Shown: positions 259-17,558, counted from the first letter of the whole stretch. The stretch: 63,717 nucleotides of DNA, filler included, from Octopus bimaculoides (GCF_001194135.2; 7 parts of 7 records of this genome joined end to end with filler, not necessarily neighbours in it), one strand, 5' to 3'. A program made the numbers and translations. Notes: a model not told the origin generated them from the sequence alone.

Positions 259-736
259 TATATATATATATATATATCAAATGATGAAAGAATGATGTCC
301 TAAAAATGGCACCACAAAATGGTAACCCTGTCCAATTGTCCAGGTATACCTAGTTCAACTGCCAGGGTGATTTGGACGGCTGGCTGTTTGAACAGCAGGG
401 TAGTAGACCAGCTATCATGAAATCCCTGAGCCGTGGTGGAGTAAGGGTTGGGGGGCAATGAATGCAGTAGGGAAGTGAATGAAAGCAGTGGCAAACAAAT
501 AAGAGGTGTTTGGGAGGACAGAAACATATATAGTTCAGCTGACCCCAGATTATATTAATGCTAAAAGGATTTTCAAATCTCCTTTGTAGCAAAAATTCTG
601 TAATTGGTTCACAGTGAGACTAAACAGGTTTTTGTAAACATTATGTATATGAATTCATATATGCAAGTATTGAAAACAACACTGTGTTGAAACTTTAGTA
701 TATATATATATATATATATATATATANNNNNNNNNN

Positions 737-768
<32 letters not shown>

Positions 769-1702
769 TAGCATATGGTTGAAAATTTGTAGATCATCTA
801 AATCAATATCTATGTTCCTTTTGCTTTCCACTATCCATTCCACACATCAACAATATATTTTGTAGAAACAAAAGTGAAAGTATTTTAAGACATTTACCCA
901 GGAATTCTACCATATCTGTTAAATCCACAGACCTCGTTATTATATATTATTTTGATATCATTAAACAGTTGTTACTGTGGTAGAAACAATAATTGCAGTA
1001 CACTAAACATCTTTAAGTATTTAATTCCACTCCTTTGATTCAAAGCTCAAATTTGATGTATGTCAAGGTCAAATGGTTGAATTTGACCCCCACATGTAAA
1101 TTCAAATTTAACTTCTAGGTCAAGGCCAAATATGACTTTCCTAACTATGTTTCACTGAATCTGACTTTCATGTCAGGGTAACATTGAACATTCATATTGA
1201 AATTAAATTTGCCTCATGTTGAGATCAAAATCAATTTTGATATCAAAGTCAATTTTGAGCTTGGTACCAAGATTCAAATTTGACAATTACACTTGAAGGT
1301 AAATAAAATGGAAGTTACAAGCATGAACTGGTATAGATTCAAACAACTATGCATCCATTAGCACAAATTTTCTAGCCATATGCCAATATAATAATATAAA
1401 ATATTTTACATACAGTTCTTCCCTTCCAATTCTGACATGCCAGAGAAGGAAAATATTTTAATTAAAATGGATTTTTTTCTCTTTCAATTTTTTTTTTAAC
1501 TCTTTTCTTCTGCTAAAACTAAGCAAGGCTTGTGGTTGATGATGACCAAAATTAAAGCAAATTTTAGTTCAGGGTGACACAAACCAGGGTAGAGAAAACA
1601 TCAGAAGATTCAGACTAACTTCAAGCAAGACTTAATAACAATGCTGAGTGTAAGTCAGTGTGCGTGAGATTTATATATACCCATATCTATGCGTATGTAT
1701 GT

Positions 1703-2154: not shown

Positions 2155-2331
2155 TCATGTTTCCATCTCCTGTTTAACATTAATGTCGCTGTCATCGGCC
2201 AAGAGATTCGCAGCTGCCACAGCAGCTTCTTCAGACTGTTTACGCACCAATTCTTCATTTGTTTCTTGACTGGAATACTTGTTGCTGTTTGGTATTGGTT
2301 CCTTCACTCTTTCATACATGTCATAGTATAC
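2155..2331 (-). CDS. TFPT: TFPT-like exon 6, terminal coding exon (VYYDMYERVKE...NVKQEMET*)
   Basis: Acceptor aaataacag, 177 nt ending in TGA at 2155-2157; completes HMG helix 3 (K-Q-V-Y-Y). Confidence 0.88.
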   Translation of the reverse strand, partial: VYYDMYERVKEPIPNSNKYSSQETNEELVRKQSEEAAVAAANLLADDSDINVKQEMET

Positions 2332-2626
2332 CTGTTATTTTGGTTTTTTAATAAGAAGCATAAAAGATTGTCTTTTTAATAAACAAAGTCCAAGAACCAC
2401 AAAACTATGCAAAAGAGAAATACCAATATACACAAAAATTCAAAATTGTATGGATCTTTCTCTAACCCTCATCACCGTTTCAGTTATTCCAGGTCTCATA
2501 GTAAATATTTGTTGTTCCTATTTTTTCCCCTCAGAACTTTCCACTTACATAACCACTCCCACACACAACACCAGCGTTTATGCTCAGAAGTGCAAACTAA
2601 ACATCAGCTACACCAGTCAAACAGTT

Positions 2627-2786
2627 CATCATCATCATCATCGCTTAACGTCCGCTTTCCATGCTAGCATGGGTTGGACGATTTGACTGAGGACTGGTGA
2701 AACCGGATGGCAACACCAGGCTCCAATCTAAATTTGGCAGAGTTTCTACAGCTGGATGCCCTTCCTAACGCCAACCACTCAGAGAG
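2627..2786 (-). mobile_element. RTE LINE 3'UTR fragment
   Basis: Reverse complement of the same 3' terminus and (GAT)n tail. Confidence 0.85.
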
Positions 2787-4964
2787 TTGGCAAAGGAAAA
2801 CATAAGGGAAAAAAAATGTAGTCTTCCCTTATTCCTTCAGTTTATTAATAAAGACAAAGACAACGAGCTGGCAGAAACGTTAGCACGCCGATAAATTGAG
2901 TACCAGTTACACACTGGGGTCGATGTAATTAACTTAATCCCTTTGTCTATCCCATCTGTGTTTAGCTCCTTGTGGGCAATAAAGAAATAAGAAACGTTAG
3001 CACGCCGGGCGAAATGCTTAGCGGTATTTCGTCTGCTGCTACGTTATGAGCTCAAATTTCGCCAAGGTAGACTTTGCCTTTCATCCTTTCGGGGTCGATT
3101 AAATAAGTACCAGTTATGCACTGGGGTTGATATAATTGACTTAATCCATTTGTCTGTCCTTGTTTGTCCCCTCTGTGTNNNNNNNNNNTCGATTAAATAA
3201 GTACCAGTTATGCACTGGGGTTGATATAATTGACTTAATCCATTTGTCTGTCCTTGTTTGTCCCCTCTGTGTGTAGCCCCTTGTGGGCAGTAAAGAAATA
3301 AGCAACGTTAGCACACAAAGCAAAATGCTTATTGGCATTTCATCTGTCTTTATGTTCTGAGTTCAAATTCTACCAAGGTCAACTTTGCCTTTTGTTCTTT
3401 GGGTGGGGTCGATAAAGTAAGTACCCAATTGCATTGAACCCCAGTGGTCAATGCAATCGATTTACCCTTTTACCCCCAAATTGCTGGCCTTGGGCCAAAA
3501 TTTGAAATCAATAAAAAGAAAGACAGTATGAATGTCATACAAAGACTGAAGTTGTTTCTGCTGTAAATGCTGTTATAGAAATGATAATAGTAGTAGGTGG
3601 TTAAGCCTAGGTTGAGCTTGATTCAGCAGAGCTATGATCAAATGCATTCCTGCTGTTATTCTAGCTTTCCCTTTACACAATGCATTGCAAATCACATCAT
3701 ACAAGGTGTCCTTGCTTTAGTTTTCAAAACAGTAAGGAGTGATTTAATGGGGGATTTAGCTGCTATACATAGCAAGTCAGGTAAGCACACAGGAACTCCT
3801 TCCTTGGTGCACATAATATGAAATTTTCACAACTCTGTAAATATCTAATACCTGTGAGGCCTAAAGTGTCGTGAAATGTATACCATTCAAGAGAATATTA
3901 TTAACTGAGAAAAATAAAATAGCTATTAAAACCAGAGGAAAGAGTGGTGTTAAAAAACTTGATTAAGGAGTGCTTATCACTGACACTACAGTACCTCATA
4001 CTGAAAAATGTATTCACTCGATAGGCTGTGTCAGTAAGAAATTCACTTTACAACCACATAATTTCTGGTTCAGTCCCACTGCACAACACCTTGAGCAAGT
4101 ATTTTCTACTACAGCTCTAAATCAACCGATGCCTTGTGACTGCCTCCAGTTGACAGAAACAGCGTGAAAGCCTGTTCTACATGTGTGTGTGTACGTATGT
4201 ACACACACATCATACATATGGGGCCTGGCATCTTTGTGTTCATCCTACAGTGACTGAAAACTGTTCACCACAACAGTTATGTAAAAAGAGAACGATAGAC
4301 TACTATCAGGTTTTTAAAAAGTATTGTAGCTGATTTGCCCAACTAAATTCTTCAGTGCATGGTTGGAGTCCAATGACTGAAACAAGTAAAATGAAAGAAT
4401 ATTTCATACATACAACGTATACTATATCACCTATGACTAAAGTACTTCACGTACAAAATACAGAGTACTTCACACACCCACTGTATTGTATTTTATGTAC
4501 TTCATAGTTAAAAATGACTTGTTAATGAAACAAATAAAACACAGGGGAGATAATTTGAAAATGTAAAAGGTTGCTGGTATACTGTACAGTTTTAAGACAT
4601 TCAATTTGTAACCATGATTCCAGGTTTGATTCCAAAGTGCAACGTCTTCGGCAAAAGTTTACTACCCATAATATTGGTCAATGAAGTCCTAGCGAATGAT
4701 GGAAACTGGTTGATGGAATTTGGCAGATAGAATCTGCAAAATTCTTTTGAGTGTCTACAAATCAACATTGATGTGAAAAAACAAAATGCACATTTAGTTC
4801 CATCTGAGTTATGTCCCTTTATGAGAAGATTGAAACTGTACCAAAGTATTCAGATCGATATTTAATCAACTAAACACCCAGGAATGAATAGACCCAACAT
4901 GGCTGCAAGACCAATGAGATAATGTAGTACAAGAAATATAAATAAAATCAAATTAGAAATTTAC

Positions 4965-5048
4965 CTGTTTCTTCTCTGGCGTCAGATTATGCCAGTTATC
5001 TGTAACTTTTGCGATTAGTACATGATGTGGAATTTCTTCACCAGTCCT
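4965..5048 (-). CDS. TFPT: TFPT-like exon 5 (HMG helix 2/3: RTGEEIPHHVLIAKVTDNWHNLTPEKKQ)
   Basis: Acceptor ctattctacag, donor CAG|GTAAAT, 84 nt, phase 0/0; contains the HMG W..L...K motif. Confidence 0.9.
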
Positions 5049-5200
5049 CTGTAGAATAGCAATTTGGTTAAATTAAAATAAAAAAATAAATAATAAATAA
5101 ATTATTAAGATTATTATTATTGCTCATTATTGTTGGTAGAATAGTTTGAGTCTTAGACTTGCGTTGTAGCATTTGTTCTGGCTCTCACAATGTCACCATC

Positions 5201-5235
<35 letters not shown>

Positions 5236-5246
<11 letters not shown>

Positions 5247-5790
5247 TAATTCGTTTTATTGGCCACAAGGGCTAATATCAATTAAAAACATAAGGACAAA
5301 GACAGGACGAAGGTTACAAAAGGTTTTGTCCGAAAAGGTAGGAAAGTTCGTCTAAACAGAGGAAGAAAACGGAGAAAAGATATGATAAATAAATAGATAA
5401 ATAAATAAGTAGAACTCCCAAAGGGGGAGGCGCTTCGAAAAAGGAAAGGTTACACGTGGAAAAACCCATAAAACCACGGGAGCCTGGTCAGAAAAAATAA
5501 GAAAGGGGTATAGAGCCCTTTCTCCNNNNNNNNNNTTCAACGGATTTGCTATGAGACAGCACTTCCCTCTCTACTCTCATCTTCCTTTTCAAGTGGAACT
5601 TGAAAAAGTTGATGAGGCCTTGGCCAAAGAGGAAAGTGTCTGTCTTTAGCCCTTTCAAACGGGTCCACCATATCACCTCTTTCGCTACAGCCAAATAATA
5701 ATAATAATAATAAGAGCCCTCAGAGAGCACAAGCCTCTGCAAAGGCAACACCAACATCCTCTCAACGATTAGCCAGAGATGATTTTTAAA
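5236..5790 (-). mobile_element. Tx1/L1-like LINE 3' end, interrupted and flanked by (TAA)n
   Basis: LAVAKEVIWWTRLKGL...LINFFKFHLKRKMRVEREVLS resembles the C-terminus of Tx1/L1-clade ORF2. Confidence 0.55.
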
Positions 5791-5794
5791 ATGA

Positions 5795-6075
5795 GAATAT
5801 CTGAAATAAACTTGACTGCTCTCACAAACAAGAATACTAAAAATGAACCTGACCACTCTCAAAAATTTTTTAAAAACAGGAAAAATAATCCAGAATCTTT
5901 GTCCGTTATCAGATCAATCCCAAAATCTAATCAGTTTGTGCCAGTCATGAGACCAAACAACCCTGAAAGTTTCATTCGAATCCATCCAGCAGTTCTTGAG
6001 CTATCTTGTCTATGGACAAACAAACAAGCACGACTAGAAGCAATGCCTCTACCTTTGCTAAGGTGGAGGTAGTAA
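5795..6075 (+). mobile_element. Helentron-associated (HINE/DINE-1-like) non-autonomous element
   Basis: Ends ...gacaaacaaacaagc...ctacctttgctaaggtggaggtagtaa, a terminal stem-loop followed by a TAA/AT target, typical of these elements. Confidence 0.45.
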
Positions 6076-6348
6076 TAAATTGTCTATGTAATCTCAAATT
6101 TTAAAACAAACTTATAATTTTCTTGTTTTCTTAAACATTCTCTAGAACAATACTATGTGCAAAACCAAATATATGACACCCTAGGCATAACACCAACTTG
6201 AACTTTTAACGTGTTGTCTCTTGATGCTCCTGAGTGAGACTTGGAGTCAAAAGTCAAACATAATAACAATAATAATAAAACCCCGTTTTTACTGTAAGAA
6301 ACTCAAATATATCTTAAATGGATTCAGAAGTTAAATTAATAGACCACT

Positions 6349-7080
6349 AAATGAGGATAGCTGCGTGAAAAAGTGTCACACCCTAACAGTTGAGGGAACC
6401 CGTGGAAGAGGTAGGCCCAGGAAGACCTGGGCTGAGGTGGTGAGGCAAGACCTTCGAACATTGGGCCTCACCGAGGCGATGACTACTGACCGAGACCTTT
6501 GGAAATGTGCTGTGCGTGAGAAGACCCGGCAAGCCAAGTGAGATCGTTGCCAGTGCCCCTGGACTAGCTCTTGTGCGGGTGACACATAAGATGTTCCATC
6601 TTGAGCGTGAGCGTTGCCAGTACCGCCTGACTGGCCTTTGTAGGGTTTTCGAGCGAGATCGTTGCCAGTGCCCCTGGACTGGCTCTTGTGCGGGTGGCAC
6701 ATAAAAGACACCATTTCGAGCGTGGCCTTTTCNNNNNNNNNNNNNNNNNNNNNTCCATCTTGAGCGTGAGCGTTGCCAGTACCGCCTGACTGGCCTTTGT
6801 AGGGTTTTCGAGCGAGATCGTTGCCAGTGCCCCTGGACTGGCTCTTGTGCGGGTGGCACATAAAAGACACCATTTCGAGCGTGGCCTTTTCGTGCGGGTG
6901 GCACGTAAAAGCACCCACTACACTCTCTGAGTGATTGGCGTTAGGAAGGGCATCCAGCTGTAGAAACTCTGCCAAATTAGATTGGAGCCTGGTGTTGCCA
7001 TCCGGTTTCACCAGTCCTCAGTCAAATCGTCCAACCCATGCTAGCATGGAAACCGGACGTTAAACGATGATGATGATGAC
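6349..7080 (+). mobile_element. 5'-truncated RTE-clade LINE, antisense in TFPT intron 4
   Basis: About 4 differences from the 14343+ copy over the first ~200 nt (manual count); same 3'UTR and (GAT)n tail. Spans an N gap. Confidence 0.9.
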
Positions 7081-7651
7081 GACTACTACTTGCACTATTA
7101 TTCTCACTGCACGAGTCAATGAGAAAGCCTCTACATGATCAACTGATAAGAAATAACAACCAAATATTACTAAGATATTAAATAGCTATTTTATCACAAA
7201 AAAGAAGGACATCTTACAAAATATAATTGTGTGTGTGTGTATCACTTATATCTTAATGTCTTGTTCTTCCTTCCAAGGTATACAGGTGGAACTTTGCTTG
7301 ACAAGTGCATCCTGTCAATAGTGAGCTGGTTATCATTCCACCATGATATGTATAACCAACCTCCGTTATTTCAATTACAACAACCTACAAGTGAGCTTCC
7401 TCATTCCCACTCCATTTCTTGGAATTCAGGGCACAGCAAATAAACCCAGCCACAAGAAGAGTATCCAGCCAGTAAATCATATCAAAATCATGAGCCACAA
7501 GTGTAAAGATAAATCCTAAAAGTGTATACTGGACTAACACATATCTTGATAGTACTGCAAAACACCAGTGGGTTGGTCAGTCAAGAATATCTCGCTGGCC
7601 ATTTGTGAAAGCCTCTCATCTATCAGCAAACAATAGCACGAGCTCTTTCTT

Positions 7652-7812
7652 TCATCATCATCATCGTTTAACGTTCGCTTTCCATGCTAGCATGGGTTGG
7701 ACGATTTGACTGAGGACTAGTGAACCAGGTGGCTACACCAGGCTCCAATCTGATTTGGCAGAGTTTCTACAGCTGGATGCCCTTCCTAACGCCAACCACT
7801 CCGACAGTGTAG
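7652..7812 (-). mobile_element. RTE LINE 3'UTR fragment
   Basis: Reverse complement of the same 3' terminus. Confidence 0.85.
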
Positions 7813-8197
7813 TTCAGATGCAGAAAACAGCATGTCTACTCTAGTATACAGGGAGGCTATAGATATGATATGAGGAATGAAGATAGACTAAGGCTCTTGG
7901 AATTCTGAGGCACAAAATGTAAAATGGACAGACCTTTTATTTATTTGCAGTATTAAGATACATTACAGTGTCACTTGAAAAGGTGATGGTGNNNNNNNNN
8001 NNNNNNNNNNNNNNNNNNNNNNNNNNNNNNNNNNNNNNNNNNNNNNNNNNNNNNNNNNNNNNNNNNNNNNNNNNNNNNNNNNNNNNNNNNNNNNNNNNNN
8101 NNNNNNNNNNNNNNNNNNNNNNNNNNNNNNNNNNNNNNNNNNNNNNNNNNNNNNNNNNNNNNNNNNNNNNNNNNNNNNNNNNNNNNAGTGGTGGGGA

Positions 8198-8560
8198 TTG
8201 TTGTTGTTGGCACTCCGTCGCTTACAACGTCGAGGGTTCCAGTTGATCCGATCAACGGAACAGCCTGTTCGTGAAATTAATGTGCAAGTGGCTGAGCACT
8301 CCAGACACGTGTACCCTTAACGTAGTTCTCGGGGATATTCAGTGTGACACAGTGTGACAAGGCTGGCCCTTTGAAATACAGGTACAACAGAAACAGGAAG
8401 AAAGAGTGAGAGAAAGTTGTGGTGAAAGAGTACAGCAGGGTTCGCCACCATCCCCTGCTGGAGCCTCGTGGAGCTTTAGGTGTTTTCGCTCAATAAACAT
8501 TCACAACGCCCGGTCTGGGAATCAAGACCGCAGCCCTAACCACTGGGCCATTGCACCTCC
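8198..8560 (-). mobile_element. tRNA-derived SINE family C
   Basis: Same as 11580-11962. Confidence 0.85.
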
Positions 8561-8964
8561 ACGATGGTGGGGATAATGCCCAGCTAATTTGCTTGATGTG
8601 ATTAAAGCAGAAATGTCATAAAAAACAAATATTGCTTAACCCTTTAACATTCAAGATTATTGTCACAAGTAATGCTTATTTATTCACATTGTTTTGAATT
8701 AATCATGCATCATCTTACAGCTTTGAGATTTTCATGACGTGATTGCTTGTTTTTAGAAGGACATTGTAGGGTAGGAGTGAGAGGTTGCATCTGGCTGGCT
8801 TGAACATAAAACTGGTAGAATATTTAGGTTGGATATGGCCGGTTTGAATGCTAAAAGGTTAATTCAAGATGTAAGTCTGACAAGTTTCACAGCCCTAAGA
8901 AATCTCCTATTTGACTGAAAGGGGAAAAAAGAAAGAACAAATCTTTATAAAAAAACATACAAAC

Positions 8965-9249
8965 CTGGAAATACTCATCCTGAACAATATTTTTATGATG
9001 CTCATAGAATGTCAGAAATGCATTTTTCGATGGGTGCTTCTTGCTGCTGTCAGCAACACCATCTTTCTTGTCAGCCTTCATTTTACGCACTTTAGCAAGT
9101 GCTGAGGGCAGTGGACCTTTGCCCGTCGTCTCTAGTAGACTACTGAAACCCAACGACCCTTTAGCAACTCTGGAAGGAGGCTCCTCTTCACATGATTCCG
9201 GTGGACTCTTTACCTTTGTTTGGTTAGCATTGAGGTATATCTGGTCTTC
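8965..9249 (-). CDS. TFPT: TFPT-like exon 4 (linker, basic patch and HMG helix 1)
   Basis: Acceptor ccattacag, donor CAG|GTTTGT, 285 nt open frame (inside provided ORF 8887..9291), ends KKHPSKNAFLTFYEHHKNIVQDEYFQ. Confidence 0.9.
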
Positions 9250-9350
9250 CTGTAATGGAGGAATAAGATAAGAGAAACAATGCCACACCAACAGTGGGAA
9301 AAAAAGGTGCAGAAAGATGACGATGATATATATATATATATATATAGAAA

Positions 9351-9605
9351 AATAATAAATGCGCCCTTTTAAAGCCTAGCCAGGCTCATGGGCCCGGTTT
9401 CCTGGTTTCAATGGCGTATGTGCTCCCCAGCTGGATGGGACGTCAGTAAATCACAGCGTTATTCATTTTTGCCAGCTGAGTGGACTGAAACAACGTGAAA
9501 TGAAGTGTTTTGCTCAAGAACACAATGCATCGCCCGGTCCAGGAATCGAAACCACAATCTTACGATCATGGTGCTGACACCCTAACCACTAAGCCACGCA
9601 CCTCC
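9351..9605 (-). mobile_element. tRNA-derived SINE family D
   Basis: Head ggaggtgcgtggcttagtggttaggg...gtttcgattcct, A/T-rich tail. Confidence 0.75.
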
Positions 9606-9699
9606 ACATATATACATATATATTAGACAAAATGAGATAACAAAGCCAAGGCTGTGAGGAGTTTTCAGGACATTTATAAGTAAAAAAGATATGGATATA

Positions 9700-9747
9700 G
9701 TCTTACAGCTGTTTCTGGGATATTATGGATATCCCTTCATCAGAGAC
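9700..9747 (-). ncRNA. Minimal type I hammerhead-ribozyme-like motif in TFPT intron 3
   Basis: GUCU-CUGAUGA-A-GGGAUAU(CCAUA)AUAUCCC-A-GAAA-C(AGCU)GU-A-AGAC: canonical core, 7-bp stem II, palindromic AGCU loop in stem III, GUA site. Confidence 0.65.
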
Positions 9748-10217
9748 GATGTGAGATGGTTAAATAGAGGTTAATGTTTGAGTAAGAAATAAGGAATTAT
9801 GATGGAAAAGGAGGAGATAGGGAATACAGAGGAAAATAAGAGAATGAAAATAGAAATAAAAATATAAAATATATAAAGATATTGTAGTTGCAGTTCCATT
9901 ATTCAAGGAAAGTGGTGTATAGAAGGGGTAAAAAGTTTCCTATACAATTTATGTAAGTTCCAATAGTAGTTCATGTTTAGTCATTTCAAAGTATGGAGCC
10001 TATATATATATATATATATATATCTTCGAAACGTCTAGTTAGAATAAAGGCAGCTGACGAAGGATTAATTCCAAGTGGCTCTCTGTTTTCCTATGTGTTC
10101 GTTCCGTTGTCTGTAGTTCATTTTTCTAACGTCCTGTACCCTGATATGCATCTATATACACATGTAGATGTAAGTATGTACATATATGTGTGTATACATG
10201 CATACATATTCTTTGTA

Positions 10218-10268
<51 letters not shown>

Positions 10269-10964
10269 TACATATATATGTGTATATTACCGTCATTATT
10301 TAATGTCTATCATCTATGCTAGCATGGGTTGGGCAATTCAGCAAGATCTAAGAAGCCAGAGTATTGTGTCATATTCCAGTATCTCCTTTGGGATGTTTCT
10401 ATGACTGGTTGCCCTTCTTGATGCCAACCACTTTATATTAAAAGAAAAAAAAAAACAACAAAAAATGGAAATACCCATTAGATAATGAATGTTTAGTTAC
10501 ACTATAATGAAACAGTACAATCCTAGGAGACTAATGATGGTCTGTTTCAGTAAATGGTTACACCAATTGTCCAAACGGTGGAGTAAATGTTATGCCATGA
10601 GGAAGAACAGAAGTTTGTTTCGGACAGAATTCTTCGCCAGAAAGTGCAAAGTGTTTACTGGTTTGGTAGGATAAATAAAGTGGAAGAAGTGAGAGAGAAG
10701 AAAATTATTACAACAGGAGGAATGGAGAGGGAGTAAGTTTTGATGGAAAGCAGAGGTTTAGGAGTAGCATCAAAAAGAGAGGAAAAAAAAAAAAAAAAGA
10801 ACACCAGCAGATATGGAGGATATTGAAAAAAGGTAACAACAGGGGAACACTGTACAAACTCACACGCACAAACCTGCACATATATACTCATATATACAAA
10901 TACAAACGTCATCTCCTTCATTGGGACATGAAACTCAGTTTGCGAAGACCTGTTGGGGCAAGCA

Positions 10965-11322
10965 AAAGCGAAATCGTCATGGCACCTGTGCCCAGCGTAG
11001 CCTTCCTGGCACGTGTGAAGGCATTCGAGCGAGATCGTTGCCAGTGCCGCTGGACTGGCTCCTATGCAGGTGGCACGTAAAATACACCATTTTGAGCGTG
11101 GCCGTTGCCAGTACCGCCTGACTGACCTTCGTGGGTGGCACGTAAAAGCACCCACTAGACTACTCTCAAAGTGGTTGACGTTAGGAAGGGCATCCAGCTG
11201 TAGAAACTCTGTCAAATCAGATTGGGGCCTGGTGTAGCCATCTGGTTTCACCAGTCCTCAGTCAAATCGTCCAACCCATGCTAGCATGGAAAGCGGACGT
11301 TAAACGATGATGATGATGATGA
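10965..11322 (+). mobile_element. RTE LINE 3'UTR fragment
   Basis: Ends ...aacccatgctagcatggaaagcggacgttaaacgatgatg like the copies above. Confidence 0.85.
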
Positions 11323-11579
11323 CAAATATACACAATACAGACACGATTGTACAAACACATCATCATCATTGTTTTAATCACTTTTCCTTGCTTCATTCGG
11401 TCAAACAGATTTGAGGCAGATTTCTGACAGCCTTCCTGTTGTCAACTCTTGCTTGTTTCCTAGCAAAGTAATATTTTCCCATGGCCAGACATGCTTTTTG
11501 CAGAATATATTGGAAAGGAATAGCATTTATATGCAATGTCAAGCTAGGGTGACAAGCATAAGCACACTCAAATACACAT

Positions 11580-11962
11580 TTGTTGTTGGCACTCCGTCGC
11601 TTACGACGTCGAGGGTTCCAGTTGATCCAATCAACGGAACAGCCTGCTCGTGAAATTAACATGCAAGTGGCTGCGCACTCCACAGACACGTGTACCCTTA
11701 ACGTAGCTCTCGGGGATATTCAGCGTGACACATTGTGAAAAGGCTGGCCCCTTTGAATTACAGGCACAACAGAAACAGGAAGTAAGAGTGAGAGAAAGTT
11801 GTGGTGAAAGAGTACAGCAGGGTTCGCGACCATCTCCTGCTAGAGCCTCGTGGAGCTTTAGGTGTTTTTCGCTAAATAAACACTCACAACGCCCGGTCTG
11901 GGAATCGAAACCGCAATCCTATGACTGCGAGTCCGCTAACCTAACCACTGGGCCATTGCGCC
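11580..11962 (-). mobile_element. tRNA-derived SINE family C with (CAA)n tail
   Basis: Head ggcgcaatggcccagtggttag...gtttcgattccc; near-identical copy at 8198-8560. Confidence 0.85.
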
Positions 11963-12242
11963 TTTGTATGTGTTTACAATGTATGTGTTTACAATTGTAT
12001 GTGTTTACAATGTATGTAAACACATACATTGTGTTTAAATATAGCAAGAGTTGGTCACAGTTTCAATGCTCTTGATTGAGGCCTGCTCAATCAAGGGTGA
12101 CCAAGGGCTACACAACTCAATAGATTAGAAAGAAAGTGGAAGTTTTATGCTTTGTTTCAGTGGTTACAAGTGCTAGAAGACCAAGTCCTGCTTTTACAGA
12201 AGAAAAATAATGAATGAATACAACCACATCATAGAAACATAC

Positions 12243-12312
12243 CTCCCACATAACAGGAACAGATGCCTCTCTGTAGTTATCACCATGTTCGTCCAGTTTA
12301 TTGGATAAAAAC
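12243..12312 (-). CDS. TFPT: TFPT-like exon 3 (R-FLSNKLDEHGDNYREASVPVMWE)
   Basis: Acceptor atattttag, donor GAG|GTATGT, 70 nt (phase 2 to 0); completes the split Arg codon and matches TFPT RFL...LD.YGD.Y. Confidence 0.92.
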
Positions 12313-13497
12313 CTAAAATATATAAATATAAAGTAATAATTAAATAAAGACTGGGAGGAGATGAAATCATTAATAAAAAGCTACAGAGTAAGTAATTAAG
12401 AAATGAACACTGGTCATGGATGTGTAGATAAGAAGTAAAACTTCATAACTGCAAGGCTCCTGGTTCAATCCCACTGCACAGCATTACTTTGAGTATCTTC
12501 CACCATGGCCTTTGATGGGCCAATGTTATGTAAGTGGAATCTGAGTTATGAAAACTCTGCAAAAGCTAATTAGATGCCTGTATGTATGCATGTAAAGTAG
12601 TTTCACAAACAATCAAGGTATGAATAATTTTTACAATGCAGTAATTAGAGGACTTCTAAGTTTCATGCCAACAGAGGCAATGATCACACAAATTTTTGGT
12701 GAAGAATTTTATTTGATAAATTTTATTGATTATATAATTCTGAAAAATCATCTGCTGTTTGCCTTTGTCTGTATAAATCTTAGTCATCTACAACCAATAT
12801 ATTATAATATATGAGTCTGTATTTGAATGTTATCAACCATTAACATCATCATCTTCACACTGGCACAGGTTGCACCTGTTTTCTGAGGTAATGTTTTATG
12901 GCTGGAAGTCCTTCCTGTCACCAACCCTTTTAGCTGCCTTTTATAAGACAGCATGAAGTATGATGTGCCTATTCTAAAACTAGGATGCATACAGTATCTT
13001 AACATCTGTTTTCCATGATGGCATTAATTGAGCAGTTTGACAGGATCCGACATTGGAACATGATGCAGTTGAAGGACCACATCATGCTCCAGTGGTCGCT
13101 TTGGCATGGTCCCTATATAGCTGAATCTCATAATATTAGTGGTGGAAGGGCAGATATAAAAATTTTTATTTTAATGTTGGTTAATTCTCAATAATCACAA
13201 ATTTCCTGCATGTTTATCAAGGCCACAAGATATGTTTCTCACTGAACCTGTGCTCAATTGCCACAGGTCACTAACTTCCAAGGAAAATACCATAATAGCT
13301 GGAGGGTAAATAAACTGTGGAAAGAAGTGTATAGCCTGTTGAACACCTGCAGCAGATATGAATTAATGAGTTACTTTAAATGTGAAATTAAAACATAGTT
13401 CTGTATAAAATACAAACTAGAGACACAGATTCTCTAATCAAAATTATTATTACCACAACCAATAATACACTCTTCCCAGAAATATACAGAAACTCAC

Positions 13498-13568
13498 CGT
13501 CTTTCTTTCTTGAATCTTTTTATGAGTTTTTTCACATGTTGAATGCGGTTTACTATCCTTTCATTTGA
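13498..13568 (-). CDS. TFPT: TFPT-like exon 2 (SNERIVNRIQHVKKLIKRFKKER+)
   Basis: Acceptor ctcttttcag, donor CG|GTGAGT, 71 nt (phase 0 to 2); most conserved TFPT motif. Confidence 0.92.
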
Positions 13569-14282
13569 CTGAAAAGAGATAACGATATTATAAAAGTTGA
13601 GATGAAGAGTGATGAAGAGGGTTTTTTTTTTTTTCTTTTGCTGTATGAGTAGTTAATGAATTCCCTGTTACTTATGTCAAAATTTCATCCTGTGACCATC
13701 ATTCCAGGTGTGAGCATATCTATCATACCATAATATATTTGATATAAATGTATCCTGAATATTTAGCCATTTTGAAAAGGATGTATTTCAGGAAGATTTG
13801 GCTCCAATTTGTTACAGATCAAGCAATGTAATGCTGAAAAATACTTGGTAAGAGCATTGGTTTTGTGTTGCAATGTGAGCTAGCTTCCTCACAACAAAAG
13901 AAAACAAAAATACAAAAATGAAAAATATGCACCTTCCAACAAGACTATTATTTTGACCCTTCCTTTCCTAAGACACTAAAAACAGTCAATAGGGAAATCT
14001 AAGATTTCAAAAGTTTTAAAACCAAACAAAATCACAAACATACATACAACTAAATTCCCAAGAGCCTGAACCACTTACCCATGTCTACATTTTAGATTCT
14101 AGAAAGCAAGGTAAAATCATAAAATTTTTAAAGCAAGTGAAATAACATTAGTACCCTCTTACATACAAACCAGAAAATTTTCAACATCACTAATCCATGT
14201 ATTCTTGTCTCCGAACTGCAACATGGATTCAACCTATTTCACTCAATCACTATTCATAGGATATACAAAAATCAACAACATA

Positions 14283-14805
14283 AGCGTCAGTAGTGGTGTG
14301 CAAGAGAGACGATTGCGCTGGTTTGGACATGTGGTGAGAATGAATGAGGATAGCTGCGTGAAAAAGTGCCACTCCCCAACAGTTGAGGGAACCCGTGGAA
14401 GAGGTAGACCCAGGAAGACCTGGGCTGAGGTGGTGAGGCAAGACCTTCGAACATTGGGCCTCACCGAGGCGATGACTACTGACCGAGACCTTTGGAAATG
14501 TGCTGTGCGTGAGAAGACCCGGCAAGCCAAGTGAGATCGTTGCCAGTACCCCTGGATTGACTCTTGTGCGGGTGGCACATAAAAGACACCATTTCAAGCG
14601 TGGCCGTTTTCGTGCGGGTGACACGTAAAAGCACCCACTACACTCTCTGAGTGGTTGGCGTTAGGAAGGGCATCCAGCTGTAGAAACTCTGCCAAATTAG
14701 ATTGGAGCCTGGTGTAGCCATCCGGTTGCACCAGTCCTCAGTCAAATCGTCCAACCCATGCTAGCATGGAAAGCGGACGGTAAACGATGATGATGATGAT
14801 GATGA
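14283..14805 (+). mobile_element. 5'-truncated RTE-clade LINE (RT C-terminus, 3'UTR, (GAT)n tail), antisense in TFPT intron 1
   Basis: VQERRLRWFGHVVRMNEDSCVKKC...VEGTRGRGRPRKTWAEVVRQDL...DRDLWK...* is the typical RTE ORF end. Confidence 0.9.
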
Positions 14806-17355
14806 TAAATCTGCCCACATTTATCGTTCTGACTGCCATCAACAAAGCTTTTAACTTAATTCCTCACTATCCACTTACACAAAAAAATTCTCAAAACCAT
14901 CTAAAGAAACAATACCAAGCATTGGCTAGTCAAGCTTATGAAGTGTACAATAAAAACATTTCCAAAACTTGCAAATTCCCACCCAAATGAAATAACAAAT
15001 TGATGCGTTGTCTCACTATTCTTTTCAAGTTTTACCTACAAGACCTTCCCAGATTAAACAGACAACCTTTTATGTAGAGGACATTACACACACAAACCTT
15101 CCCTGACTCTCTAGACACAGCTAAAGAACAACATCCTGACTTCAATCACATTGAAATTTGTCCAACATACTTAAAGTAGCACCTACCAAATTCACTGTCT
15201 GTAAGAATACTAACAATAACAGACAACAACTAATACAACCAATCAATAACATCAAAATATCACACACACACAGAAAACAAATATACTAGACGTTATATGC
15301 AACTCCTCTAAAATATTCTCAACACACAGATGACAATAAAGAAAGCAGAATTTCACACTAACAGACTTAGAGCAATCACAGGTACCACATTTGGCCAAAT
15401 AGAAAACACCAGCTGCATACAAAGCAATAGATTAGATCCATCATGGAGAAGGCTTTAACCACCTTTAACTCCAATCTTTCTATTTTGTACCATAACAGGC
15501 TGTACATAAAATACTTACAGACCACTTGCACAGCAAAACACAAATAAAAGACATAACCACCTGAACATGTGAAAAGTACAGTTTGTGTGATTGCTGAATG
15601 TTTCAACTTCTTGAGTCCCGTCACTACATGTTAAGTCACTTCCAAACACACAACACTCCAGAGCATCGCTACAACAACATTCTAAAAACATTCTCAAACA
15701 AATGTACAAGAACACACACACAAACAATTGCAAATTCATCAAATACTGTTTGGGATGGTACAAATAAGTGCAGAAGAACAGCAACAGTCATATTTCAACC
15801 ATGTCCATTTTATCGGTCTCCAGTGTGGCACTATCAGAATCTGTGGAAGACCAGACAGTAAGAGTACAATGTAGTCCTAGAATATTTGTAGTTATATGAT
15901 GAACATTGTAAGTACAGTTAACTTCTTTACCTCATTAGGCTCTGTTCATATATTTCAGCAGTATACTGTAATGAACCAGTGTTTGGCGAATCACCACACA
16001 AGTGTTGTGTATGCAAGTATTATCAAAGTACTAGACAAGTTACTTCTTTGAGTCTCATATCCCACTGTCAAATCTTGTAGAGCTTATGCACTGGTGAGCC
16101 TCAAACAATGTTATGGAACAGGCTAGTGTCAGAATAGTGTGCTGGGTACTTTTAACGTGGCACCAGTACGGGTGCTATATATAAATCTCACACAAATACA
16201 CAATTTCAGTCTACCAAATCCACTCACAAGGATTTGATTGTCCTGAGGCTATAGTAGTGGACTTACCAAAATCCTCTCTACTACAGCCTCCAGGTTCAGT
16301 CCCACTATGTGGTTAGGAAGCAAACTTCTTAACCATACAGCCATGCCTCGACTTATAACAGATTGCCAGCATGCCTGTTAACAGTTACCTATCACGGTCA
16401 GTCTTTATTCTGTAGATCCAAGCGATCAATCTATCTATCTACATAAATACAATAAGGGATATAGAGCAAACATAAAAAGTAAACATGAGGCTACGCATAG
16501 CACTTTAGCGCTTTCTCAATTTGCAGGAATTTATTTCATGACGATCGCACAAAGAAATTTAAATTCTACAGAATTTGTTAAATACCTTGAGGGTCTAATT
16601 CTTAAATTTTAGTTTATTGTCTTAAAAAATTATAAAATAAAAGCATTTTACGAAAACAAATCGGTTTACATTAAGTTTGCGTCGCTTTTATTTTATTCCA
16701 AAGAAAACAATTCTTTCACTGCAAAGTTCTGGAAAATGACGATCTCTGCCGACTTTAGTTTCACTTTCTGCACCATTAATTTATTTCTTAAACGCAAAAA
16801 GCAAATAACAGAACATGCGAGCGATATATTATCACCCCCAACGACTAAAAGGACATTAACTATTGGGACCATAACGACTTCTCCAACCAATGTCAACGAA
16901 GAAATGCGGACATACACACATACACAATAAAATTGCGTGAGTATATAAACTATGCAAAAGTTCACATGCTTGTTGGAGATATTTTTGTCACGCTGTATAA
17001 ACACTATAAACACTATCTCTCTGCATACAAGATGAATATAAACGTTCATTTATATTCTCAATAAGGCTGCAATAAATAGAGGAAACTCATCGAGGTGTTC
17101 GCGAGTCCAGCCTGGCTTAACAACAGGGATCTATTTTCACAAGGACGCTAAATCTGCTTATTAGACATAAGCAGGTGAATTTACTCACAATTTATTTGTG
17201 TATGCGTGTGTGTGTGTATATATAACACGTTTCATTGAGTGGTAAAGCAACAAAAGAAATTCGAAACAAGTTATGCAGAAGTGAAAATATCATACCACAT
17301 GTAAAAGTAATAGAATAACAAAGATCTAGGTGTGTGTATATATACTTATATATAC

Positions 17356-17388
<33 letters not shown>

Positions 17389-17456
17389 TACTAGTATGCT
17401 TGTAGGTAGCACAGGTGTTGTGTAGGTATTTGTTTACAGTCAGACCGTCTTCTTAC

Positions 17457-17558
17457 CTGCTGAAGTGTGTCGCATTTCTTCTTTAAGATGCAGTATTTAT
17501 GCAGAAAAACGTTTTCTTGAGAATATTTCTCAATCTTAGCTTCCAGGCTCTCCGCCAT
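17457..17558 (-). CDS. TFPT: TFPT-like exon 1 (MAESLEAKIEKYSQENVFLHKYCILKKKCDTLQQ)
   Basis: ATG in good context (AGAATGG), in-frame TAA 10 codons upstream (17589-17591), 102 nt, donor CAG|GTAAGA, phase 0. Confidence 0.9.

What the first reader, a model, noticed from the sequence alone, without database searches (positions are those of the whole stretch)
2155..17558. TFPT/INO80F orthologue carrying a C-terminal HMG box (Nhp10-like architecture in an animal)
Seen: the spliced 262-aa protein joins a TFPT-type coiled coil (exons 1-3) to a recognisable HMG box (KKHPSKNAFLTFY...IAKVTDNWHNLTPEKKQVYYDMYERVKE, exons 4-6). Established: TFPT is an N-module subunit of the INO80 remodeller and is not known as an HMG protein in humans, whereas yeast Nhp10 is the HMG-box subunit of the equivalent module. 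Inference: this protein bridges the two, implying TFPT and Nhp10 are orthologues and the HMG box was lost in mammals or vertebrates. This animal's INO80 may then retain an Nhp10-like DNA-binding arm. Other invertebrate TFPTs may already be known to share this.
Basis: partly seen in the sequence, partly recalled or inferred. Interest (0 to 1): 0.7.

Follow-up and report, generated by a model that had tools for sequence, protein, structure and literature searches.

The report
Octopus INO80F/Nhp10 gene with HMG box
This is the octopus's single, ordinary copy of a chromatin-remodeller subunit (TFPT/INO80F) that still carries a DNA-binding HMG box, as in most invertebrates and in fungal Nhp10, so the land vertebrates tested are the exception, not the octopus.

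Summary
Six minus-strand exons with GT-AG borders splice into a 262-aa protein. All four N gaps lie in introns. Residues 21-64 match Pfam INO80F (50 bits, cut-off 25). Residues 156-215 are an HMG box. It falls just under Pfam's cut-off (22.5 against 25.4 bits) but scores 60 bits against the box of non-cephalopod orthologues, and it is predicted with pLDDT about 95 as three helices that superpose on solved HMG boxes.

The gene is single copy and matches Octopus sinensis LOC115216485.

The architecture is not special to this animal. INO80F plus an HMG box occurs in over 180 database proteins: molluscs, a brachiopod, an annelid, a bryozoan, a priapulid, arthropods, echinoderms, hemichordates, amphioxus, sponges, an ichthyosporean and fungi, including Neolecta 'Nhp10'. 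All 120 tetrapod TFPTs listed lack the box.

This is already implicit in Pfam and NCBI names, although INO80 papers of 2025-26 still call the Nhp10 module non-conserved.

The octopus box is unusually derived, with both ends trimmed.

Interest is modest.

The parts
17457..17558 (-). Exon 1: start codon and residues 1-34, the start of the INO80F coiled coil
   Evidence: ATG followed by an open frame. Donor CAG|GTAAGA. Genome search hit covering query residues 1-38.
13498..13568 (-). Exon 2: residues 35-57 plus two bases of codon 58, the core of the INO80F domain (SNERIVNRIQHVKKLIKRFKKER)
   Evidence: Acceptor TTTTCAG|, donor |GTGAGT. This is the only PF24245 match in the whole genome, 31.7 bits.
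12243..12312 (-). Exon 3: residues 58-81, the end of the coiled coil and the conserved LDEHGDNYR...PVMWE motif
   Evidence: Acceptor TTTTAG|, donor |GTATGT, and the phase 2/1 join restores Arg58. The motif is conserved in all animal homologues, vertebrate TFPT included.
8965..9249 (-). Exon 4: residues 82-176, comprising the disordered linker, the basic patch KVRKMKADKK and helix 1 of the HMG box (residues 155-176 = window 8965-9030)
   Evidence: Acceptor TTACAG|, donor |GTTTGT. pLDDT is below 50 for most of residues 93-154 and about 95 from residue 161.
4965..5048 (-). Exon 5: residues 177-204, HMG box helix 2 and the start of helix 3, including the invariant Trp195
   Evidence: Acceptor CTACAG|, donor |GTAAAT. 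Trp195 is invariant in 41 family members.
2155..2331 (-). Exon 6: residues 205-262 and the stop codon. It holds the rest of a short helix 3 (to about residue 214, window 2299-2331 = residues 205-215) and a C-terminal helix at 225-248
   Evidence: Acceptor TAACAG|, TGA stop. Helices 200-214 and 225-248 in the model.
2332..4964 (-). Intron 5, containing the N gap 3179-3188
   Evidence: The gap is flanked by an exact 84-bp duplicate, 3095-3178 = 3189-3272.
5049..8964 (-). Intron 4, containing the N gaps 5526-5535, 6733-6753 and 7992-8186
   Evidence: The 6733-6753 gap is flanked by an exact 138-bp duplicate, 6595-6732 = 6754-6891. The other two gaps have no flank duplication. The protein is colinear with orthologues across the exon 4/5 join.

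Best explanation
The locus is the single-copy octopus orthologue of the INO80 complex subunit known as TFPT/INO80F in vertebrates and Nhp10 in fungi. It keeps the two-domain form ancestral to opisthokonts.

Parts of the protein:
- a long N-terminal helix (residues 2-66, the INO80F domain plus a conserved LDxHGDxYR extension);
- a disordered linker with a basic patch;
- a single HMG box (about 155-215);
- a short acidic C-terminal helix.

Inferred mechanism, by analogy with yeast:
- The helix pairs with other N-module subunits. A separate INO80E gene exists in this genome. This pairing tethers the protein to the N-terminus of the Ino80 ATPase.
- The HMG box, together with the basic patch, contacts extranucleosomal or distorted DNA. 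This would contribute to the sensing of flanking-DNA length and to the auto-inhibition described for the yeast Nhp10 module.

What is shown: the gene structure, both domain homologies, the predicted fold, single-copy status, and the phylogenetic spread of the architecture. What is inferred: membership of the INO80 complex, and DNA binding.
For: - Gene model with canonical splice sites.
- PF24245 at 50.2 bits, above its cut-off.
- HMG region at 60.2 bits against a non-cephalopod family HMM. The molluscan profile hits HMGB1 in the PDB at 4e-16.
- AF2 model: helix 2-66 with pLDDT above 90 over residues 21-60, and three helices 155-178, 184-197 and 200-214 with pLDDT about 95.
- The top Foldseek PDB hits are HMG boxes. 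CIC superposes at rmsd 1.2 A over 59 columns (probability 0.99), and SOX30 gives TM 0.71.
- One locus only in the 2.34-Gb genome, and one PF24245 hit. A separate INO80E locus lies on contig C25.
- The two-domain architecture is seen in 182 hits to the molluscan profile; the precomputed Pfam column shows it for 118 of the 120 listed. It is also seen in named amphioxus, hemichordate, echinoderm, sponge, ichthyosporean and fungal proteins. Nine of the ten scanned pass both Pfam cut-offs.
- Tetrapod TFPTs lack the box.
- The HMG boxes of all 31 two-domain proteins, fungal ones and yeast Nhp10 included, fall in one subtree (aLRT 89).
Against: - On its own the octopus box is below Pfam's gathering score.
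- It lacks the N-terminal DPNAPKKP strand and the C-terminal RYxxEMxxY part of helix 3. It matches only positions 9-68 of the family HMM.
- It has replaced the conserved helix-2 ELTK motif with VLIAK.
- Between octopus and two other cephalopod-like sequences the box is only 56-59% identical, against 87-88% for the N-domain. This suggests weaker constraint.
- AF2 confidence may be inherited from the alignment.
- Foldseek E-values are poor (0.2-1) because the domain is a small part of the query.
- There is no direct evidence of complex membership, DNA binding or splice junctions in this species.
Confidence: 0.85

Rival explanations
1. The HMG box is decaying in cephalopods, in parallel with its loss in vertebrates. 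The protein would then act only as a coiled-coil scaffold of the N-module, and the box would no longer bind DNA.
For: - The box is below the Pfam cut-off.
- Both ends of the box's long arm are missing and the ELTK motif is changed.
- The box evolves almost as fast as the disordered linker among cephalopods: 56-59% identity against 47-49% for the linker, while the N-domain is 87-88%.
- Pfam's precomputed annotation lists only PF24245 for the O. sinensis protein.
Against: - The hydrophobic core (F159, F162, W195, Y206) is kept, as is Leu160, which occupies the position of the DNA-wedge residue in canonical boxes (the wedge assignment is from my own knowledge of HMG boxes).
- The box scores 60 bits against the orthologous box.
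- The three-helix prediction is confident.
- The reading frame is intact across three exons.
- Net charge (+1) is no different from the rest of the family, which ranges from -5 to +3.
Confidence: 0.2
2. Animals and fungi joined an INO80F-type coiled coil to an HMG box independently. TFPT and Nhp10 would then share only the N-domain, or only a generic coiled coil, and would not be orthologues.
For: - The N-domain is short (47 Pfam positions) and helical.
- Fungal members also cross-hit INO80E.
- Support for the HMG-box subtree is moderate (aLRT 89), from a quick tree on 74 columns.
Against: - Domain order and spacing are the same in fungi, Ichthyophonus, three sponges and bilaterians.
- Neolecta, Calcarisporiella and Ichthyophonus proteins score 46-63 bits on PF24245.
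- Residues N36, E37, R42, K48, L64 and D69 are invariant in the animal alignment.
- A single colinear BLASTP alignment spans both domains between octopus and Neolecta.
- All 31 two-domain HMG boxes, fungal and animal, fall in one subtree away from about 120 other HMG boxes; in a strict count the group needs 10 changes, partly because several outgroup-labelled rows there are truncated or mislabelled family members.
Confidence: 0.07
3. The 262-aa model is a chimera of two neighbouring genes: a TFPT-like gene (exons 1-3) and a separate HMG gene (exons 4-6).
For: Exons 3 and 4 are about 3 kb apart. Introns 4 and 5 contain assembly gaps. No junction reads for this species were examined.
Against: - The join is identical in the RefSeq O. 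sinensis protein.
- Uninterrupted ORFs on short transcript-like contigs of two related samples carry both domains.
- The same colinear architecture is seen in more than 180 proteins from many phyla.
- Splice phases match, and exon 4 has no plausible independent start.
Confidence: 0.03

Closest known systems
Vertebrate TFPT / INO80F (Amida), subunit of the N-terminal module of human INO80; Pfam PF24245
   Same: The INO80F coiled-coil domain and the following LDxxGDxYR...LE(D/E)E motif are shared, with 33% identity over 88 residues and E 1e-17. Overall size is similar, at about 250-260 aa.
   Different: The tetrapod proteins listed have no HMG box. Instead they carry a conserved N-terminal FEEFSxPPGSELALPPLFGG...EVEF motif and a C-terminal SW...DKLL.YP...DFD motif. 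The vertebrate head-to-head pairing with PRPF31 (described in PMC4341892) is not shared: the octopus Prp31_C match is on another contig.
Fungal Nhp10 (S. cerevisiae YDL002C; Neolecta 'Non-histone protein 10'), the HMG-box subunit of the Ino80 Nhp10 module
   Same: The architecture is the same: an N-terminal INO80F-type helix, a linker and a single HMG box. The alignment with the Neolecta protein is colinear, E 3e-9. The HMG boxes group together in the tree.
   Different: Fungal boxes keep the DPxAPKRP strand and the full helix 3, whereas the octopus box has lost both. The fungal N-domain lacks the animal HGDxYR extension.
Invertebrate 'TCF3 fusion partner homolog' / 'non-histone protein 10' proteins (for example Branchiostoma TFPT, Mizuhopecten, Nasonia, Zootermopsis)
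   Same: These are direct orthologues, 31-47% identical over most of the length, with both Pfam domains.
   Different: They pass the HMG_box cut-off with a complete box, whereas the octopus box, and those of the two closest relatives, are trimmed at both ends.

Membership tests
INO80F / TFPT (Pfam PF24245) | N-terminal coiled-coil domain scoring above the curated Pfam cut-off | tested here: met
   50.2 bits against a cut-off of 25.1, residues 21-64.
INO80F / TFPT (Pfam PF24245) | INO80F is the best-matching family, ahead of INO80E and other coiled coils | tested here: met
   INO80E is not reported even at E <= 10. The next hits have E >= 0.01.
INO80F / TFPT (Pfam PF24245) | Direct similarity to vertebrate TFPT | tested here: met
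   BLASTP E 1e-17 to a mammalian TFPT-cluster sequence (P0275, an unnamed Logan entry), covering the domain and the GDxYR extension.
INO80F / TFPT (Pfam PF24245) | Sole family member in the genome (orthologue rather than paralogue) | tested here: met
   There is one PF24245 locus and one set of six exons in G000. The search is exon-wise and reports only the best candidates.
INO80F / TFPT (Pfam PF24245) | Physical subunit of the INO80 complex | not testable with these tools
   This needs affinity purification with mass spectrometry.
HMG box (Pfam PF00505) | Score above the curated Pfam cut-off | tested here: not met
   22.5 bits against a cut-off of 25.4, although E is 1.6e-4. The nine non-cephalopod relatives scanned score 35-76 bits and the cephalopod relative P0002 scores 27.4.
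HMG box (Pfam PF00505) | Homology to bona fide HMG boxes at profile level | tested here: met
   60.2 bits, E 8e-21, against a non-cephalopod family box HMM. The molluscan family profile (which includes the cephalopod sequences) hits HMGB1 at 4e-16 and Nhp6A at 8.5e-11.
HMG box (Pfam PF00505) | Three-helix L-shaped fold | tested here: met
   This is a prediction only. Helices 155-178, 184-197 and 200-214 have pLDDT about 95. The best PDB fold matches are HMG boxes, with rmsd 1.2-1.6 A over about 60 columns.
HMG box (Pfam PF00505) | N-terminal basic extended strand (PKxP) packing on a full-length helix 3 | tested here: not met
   Octopus has KKHPSK-NAF in place of DPNAPKKPANAF, and helix 3 ends at ERVKEPIP.
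HMG box (Pfam PF00505) | Binds bent or distorted DNA | not testable with these tools
   This needs an EMSA or anisotropy assay.
Nhp10 (fungal INO80 N-module HMG subunit) | INO80F-type N-terminal helix followed by a single HMG box | tested here: met
   The fungal members tested have the same architecture, except the chytrid (two HMG boxes, INO80F below cut-off).
Nhp10 (fungal INO80 N-module HMG subunit) | Sequence homology to fungal Nhp10 over both domains | tested here: met
   Colinear BLASTP to Neolecta 'Non-histone protein 10', E 3e-9.
Nhp10 (fungal INO80 N-module HMG subunit) | The HMG box shares ancestry with the Nhp10 box rather than with another HMG subfamily | tested here: inconclusive
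   All two-domain boxes lie in one subtree with aLRT 89, but this is a quick tree on 74 columns and the careful search did not finish.
Nhp10 (fungal INO80 N-module HMG subunit) | Assembles with Ies1/Ies3/Ies5-type partners on the Ino80 N-terminus | not testable with these tools
   Partner homologies were not examined. Only an INO80E locus was confirmed in the genome.

The most novel reading that the evidence does not exclude
The 'Nhp10 module' is not yeast-specific. TFPT/INO80F and Nhp10 are one orthologous subunit that already had a coiled coil plus an HMG box in the opisthokont ancestor. Somewhere between the amphioxus split and the tetrapods, the vertebrate lineage discarded the DNA-binding box. 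If so, the sensing of flanking DNA by the N-module of human INO80 must work differently from that of yeast and of most animals. The INO80 papers read here from 2020, 2025 and 2026 still list these subunits as non-conserved. The link therefore appears to exist only implicitly, in Pfam and in automatic protein names.
Probability: 0.75. Interest if true: 0.5.

Novelty: new member of a known kind. Interest (0 to 1): 0.33.

Why it matters
For the octopus genome this is routine annotation: an 'uncharacterized protein' can be named the INO80 subunit F/Nhp10 orthologue.

The wider point is not specific to this window. A subunit treated in the INO80 literature as yeast-specific (Nhp10) and one treated as metazoan-specific (TFPT/Amida) are the same ancestral protein. 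Most animals keep its HMG box, and the tetrapods examined here have lost it.

That gives a concrete handle on an open question: how the poorly resolved N-module reads extranucleosomal DNA, and why yeast and human complexes differ. Invertebrate or amphioxus proteins could serve as intermediates for structural and biochemical work.

Tried and rejected
1. Vertebrate C-terminus as a degenerate HMG remnant. MAFFT aligned the vertebrate SW...DKLL.YP motif with the W..L..EDKK.YY of the box. A profile-profile test of the C-terminal halves gave probability 0.5% and E 0.11, so there is no support.

2. Synteny with PRPF31, the head-to-head partner of vertebrate TFPT. The only Prp31_C match lies on contig C2, not near this gene.

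3. Net charge of the box as a sign of decay. Octopus is +1 and the family spans -5 to +3, so this is uninformative.

4. Literature hits for 'INO80F' together with 'Nhp10'. These were artefacts of INO80^fl^ and Ino80^FLAG^. No paper in the library links TFPT to Nhp10 or to an HMG box.

5. Exact look-up of the 262-aa product in public assemblies. It is not on record.

6. Locating the loss within vertebrates. The TFPT search listed only the best 120 of 388 hits, all tetrapods.

7. Careful maximum-likelihood tree of HMG boxes. It did not finish in the time allowed, so only the quick tree is reported.

8. PDB sequence search for a solved TFPT or Nhp10 N-domain. Among the 60 of 66 matches listed, the profile hit only HMG boxes.


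Full report
**What is in the window**

The gene lies on the minus strand. Translating all frames and reading the candidate exons with their flanks gave six exons:
- exon 1, 17457-17558
- exon 2, 13498-13568
- exon 3, 12243-12312
- exon 4, 8965-9249
- exon 5, 4965-5048
- exon 6, 2155-2331

Each has an AG acceptor and a GT donor, and the phases are compatible.

The four N runs flagged by the scan's program all fall in introns. 3179-3188 is in intron 5. 5526-5535, 6733-6753 and 7992-8186 are in intron 4. The protein is colinear with its orthologues across the exon 4/5 and 5/6 joins, so no coding segment is hidden in a gap. Two of the gaps are flanked by exact duplicates: 3095-3178 = 3189-3272, and 6595-6732 = 6754-6891. 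These look like unmerged contig overlaps rather than missing sequence.

**Domains**

- Pfam gives INO80F (PF24245) at residues 21-64, with 50.2 bits against a cut-off of 25.1.
- Pfam gives HMG_box (PF00505) at residues 156-215, with E 1.6e-4 and 22.5 bits. That is just under the 25.4-bit cut-off. INO80E is not reported.
- The best single-sequence PDB hit is the BBX HMG box, E 0.004.
- A profile of molluscan orthologues hits HMGB1 at 4e-16.
- An HMM of the family's box built without any cephalopod scores the octopus region at 60.2 bits, E 8e-21.
- AlphaFold2, run with a 41-sequence alignment, predicts one long helix (2-66, pLDDT above 90 for residues 21-60). It also predicts a disordered linker (about 90-154), three helices at 155-178, 184-197 and 200-214 with pLDDT about 95, and a further helix at 225-248.
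- The top Foldseek hits in the PDB are HMG boxes. CIC superposes at rmsd 1.2 A over 59 columns, and SOX30 gives TM 0.71. The E-values are weak (0.2-1) because the box is a small part of the query.

The HMG box is therefore real. It is also a derived one:
- It matches only positions 9-68 of the family HMM.
- It lacks the N-terminal DPNAPKKP strand and the C-terminal RYxxEMxxY end of helix 3.
- It has VLIAK where the family has ELTK.

Between the octopus and two 63-64%-identical relatives, the N-domain is 87-88% identical. The box is only 56-59% identical, close to the linker's 47-49%.

**Identity and copy number**

The protein equals RefSeq 'uncharacterized protein LOC115216485 [Octopus sinensis]' apart from one extra Asn at position 220. 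In the window's own 2.34-Gb assembly the six exons occur only here, and there is a single PF24245 match, at exon 2. A separate INO80E locus lies on another contig.

The closest non-octopus relative (P0002) is encoded as an uninterrupted ORF on two independent contigs of 1.1-1.6 kb from sequencing-run assemblies. This is what a spliced transcript looks like. It is the only transcript-type evidence I could obtain. It comes from a relative, not from this species.

**How widespread the architecture is**

A search with the octopus protein found 23 proteins. The 22 non-octopus hits were all annotated PF24245 plus PF00505; the named ones are molluscan and six come from unnamed Logan assemblies. A profile of 16 of them found 182 proteins. 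The 120 listed include Lingula, Priapulus, a scorpion and many insects. Automatic annotators have variously named them 'non-histone protein 10', 'TCF3 fusion partner homolog', 'HMGB1-like' or 'SSRP1-like'.

An exhaustive profile search of 1.84 billion representatives found many more. A local scan of the 262 proteins collected to that point found both domains in 183. Looking up the names of 30 representatives gave these two-domain proteins:
- Branchiostoma lanceolatum 'TFPT';
- hemichordates Saccoglossus and Glandiceps;
- a crinoid, a sea urchin and a sea cucumber;
- sponges Sycon, Corticium and Ephydatia;
- the ichthyosporean Ichthyophonus;
- fungi Calcarisporiella, Linderina, a chytrid and Neolecta 'Non-histone protein 10';
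- also an annelid, a bryozoan, a nemertean and a pycnogonid.

Ten were re-scanned. Nine pass the curated cut-offs of both Pfam families; the chytrid (Boothiomyces) reaches only 16.7 bits on INO80F. For example, Neolecta scores 60.2 and 56.0 bits, Calcarisporiella 62.8 and 75.9, and Branchiostoma 52.0 and 50.4.

The best 120 are mammals, reptiles, birds and frogs. None carries PF00505; most carry PF24245 only, and a few have no Pfam hit on record.

**Orthology**

- The octopus protein aligns with a mammalian TFPT over the coiled coil and the following GDxYR motif (E 1e-17).
- It aligns with Neolecta Nhp10 in a single colinear alignment spanning both domains (E 3e-9).
- In a quick maximum-likelihood tree of 170 HMG boxes, all 31 boxes from two-domain proteins fall in one 48-row subtree (aLRT 89). 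Fungal boxes and yeast Nhp10 are among them. The boxes outside it are the best-scoring other HMG boxes in the library. Several of the other rows inside that subtree are truncated or mislabelled family members. Support is moderate and the careful search did not finish.

Taken together, the data support one origin of the two-domain protein before fungi and animals split. They also support loss of the box on the line to tetrapods, after amphioxus branched off. I could not sample fish, cyclostomes or tunicates.

A suggestive alignment of the vertebrate C-terminal motif with helices 2-3 of the box was not significant. The vertebrate TFPT-PRPF31 gene pairing is not present in the octopus.

**Likely function**

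In yeast, the Nhp10 module (Nhp10, Ies1, Ies3, Ies5) sits on the Ino80 N-terminus and carries DNA-binding domains. Together with the Arp8 module it imposes auto-inhibition, which is relieved by long flanking DNA (PMC12403922). Nhp10 is modelled as the scaffold of that module (bioRxiv 10.64898/2026.05.15.725493).

By homology, I infer that the octopus N-helix is the assembly element and that the linker's basic patch plus the HMG box form the DNA-contacting arm. This is inference; nothing here tests complex membership or DNA binding. The trimmed box leaves a real possibility, which I put at about 0.2, that DNA binding is weakened in cephalopods.

**Novelty**

The gene is already in RefSeq, unnamed. 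The architecture is already visible in Pfam annotations and in NCBI's automatic names.

What is not in the papers I could search is the statement that TFPT and Nhp10 are the same subunit:
- No paper combines TFPT with an HMG box and INO80, or treats TFPT and Nhp10 as homologues.
- A 2020 review lists them in separate, unmatched columns.
- A 2025 Science paper states that the Nhp10 module is not conserved between yeast and human.

The library lacks most subscription journals, so absence there is not proof.

**Verdict**

I rate the locus itself as an ordinary new member of a known family. The general inference is correct and under-appreciated, but it is not specific to this window.

Noticed in passing
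window 3095-3178 = 3189-3272; 6595-6732 = 6754-6891: Exact 84-bp and 138-bp duplicates sit immediately on either side of the N gaps 3179-3188 and 6733-6753. They look like contig ends that overlap but were not merged, so the 'gaps' probably hide no sequence and create false tandem duplications.
   Followed up: partly
window 2626-2787, 6917-7079, 7652-7813, 11162-11322, 14642-14802: Five copies of an interspersed repeat of about 160 bp, 93-97% identical and in both orientations, all inside introns. It is SINE-like and gives the recurring 'HASMGWTI...GLVKPDGNTRLQS' pseudo-ORFs.
   Followed up: partly
window 6350-6589 and 14343-14582 (ORFs 6335-6541 and 14115-14534, + strand): Two 96%-identical copies carry an ORF ending in ...RRLRWFGHVVRMNEDSCVKKCH..TVEGTRGRGRPRKTWAEVVRQDL... 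From memory this resembles the C-terminal tail of a non-LTR retrotransposon ORF2. It was not checked against any library.
   Followed up: no
window 8201-8532 and 11580-11915: Another intronic repeat pair, 336 bp at 93% identity and in the same orientation.
   Followed up: no
L011 2020-2943 (+) and 7294-8178 (+) (G000:C9:16001145-16011144, upstream of exon 1): Two tandem, apparently intronless ORFs of about 300 aa with similar sequences (MASESAIQHLSQRATLAEEIL...[36 protein letters not shown]...). By eye they look like AIMP1/EMAP-II-type tRNA-binding-domain proteins. They are possibly duplicated retrogenes.
   Followed up: no
alignment A3 (tetrapod TFPTs); P0126, P0133, P0156: Tetrapod TFPTs share an almost invariant N-terminal motif (V.FEEFS.PPGSELALPPLFGG.ILESEL.TEVEF) that the invertebrate and fungal homologues aligned here lack, and a C-terminus ending in ...SP....DFD. 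Echinoderm orthologues end in a similar DPY(N/H/S)FD motif after their HMG box. The vertebrate tail may therefore descend from a post-box tail motif rather than from the box.
   Followed up: partly
window 2155-2331 (exon 6, residues 225-248): A predicted C-terminal helix (EELVRKQSEEAAVAAANLL) is conserved in cephalopods. It resembles the E(A/S)QSAV.AL.M ending of bivalve and some gastropod orthologues, so it may be a lophotrochozoan-specific extra element of unknown role.
   Followed up: no
P0188, P0217, P0222 (fungal and ichthyosporean homologues): Their N-helix also hits Pfam INO80E, and Calcarisporiella scores above that family's cut-off (34.5 against 27.8 bits). INO80E and INO80F may be paralogous coiled-coil subunits.
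   Followed up: no
window 2270-2272 region (codon 220): The window encodes PNSNKYSS where the O. sinensis RefSeq protein has PNS-KYSS. This is a 3-bp indel in an AAC/AGC-rich stretch. Otherwise the two proteins are identical, and the window's assembly (contig of 96.9 Mb) is not the assembly that holds the RefSeq protein (contig of 105.9 Mb).
   Followed up: partly
window 690-780, 1650-2060, 9990-10300, 17200-17400: Long (TA)n and (CA)n microsatellite tracts, two of them interrupted by N gaps (727-736, 1752-1761), give the IYIYIY and HTHTHT pseudo-ORFs.
   Followed up: no
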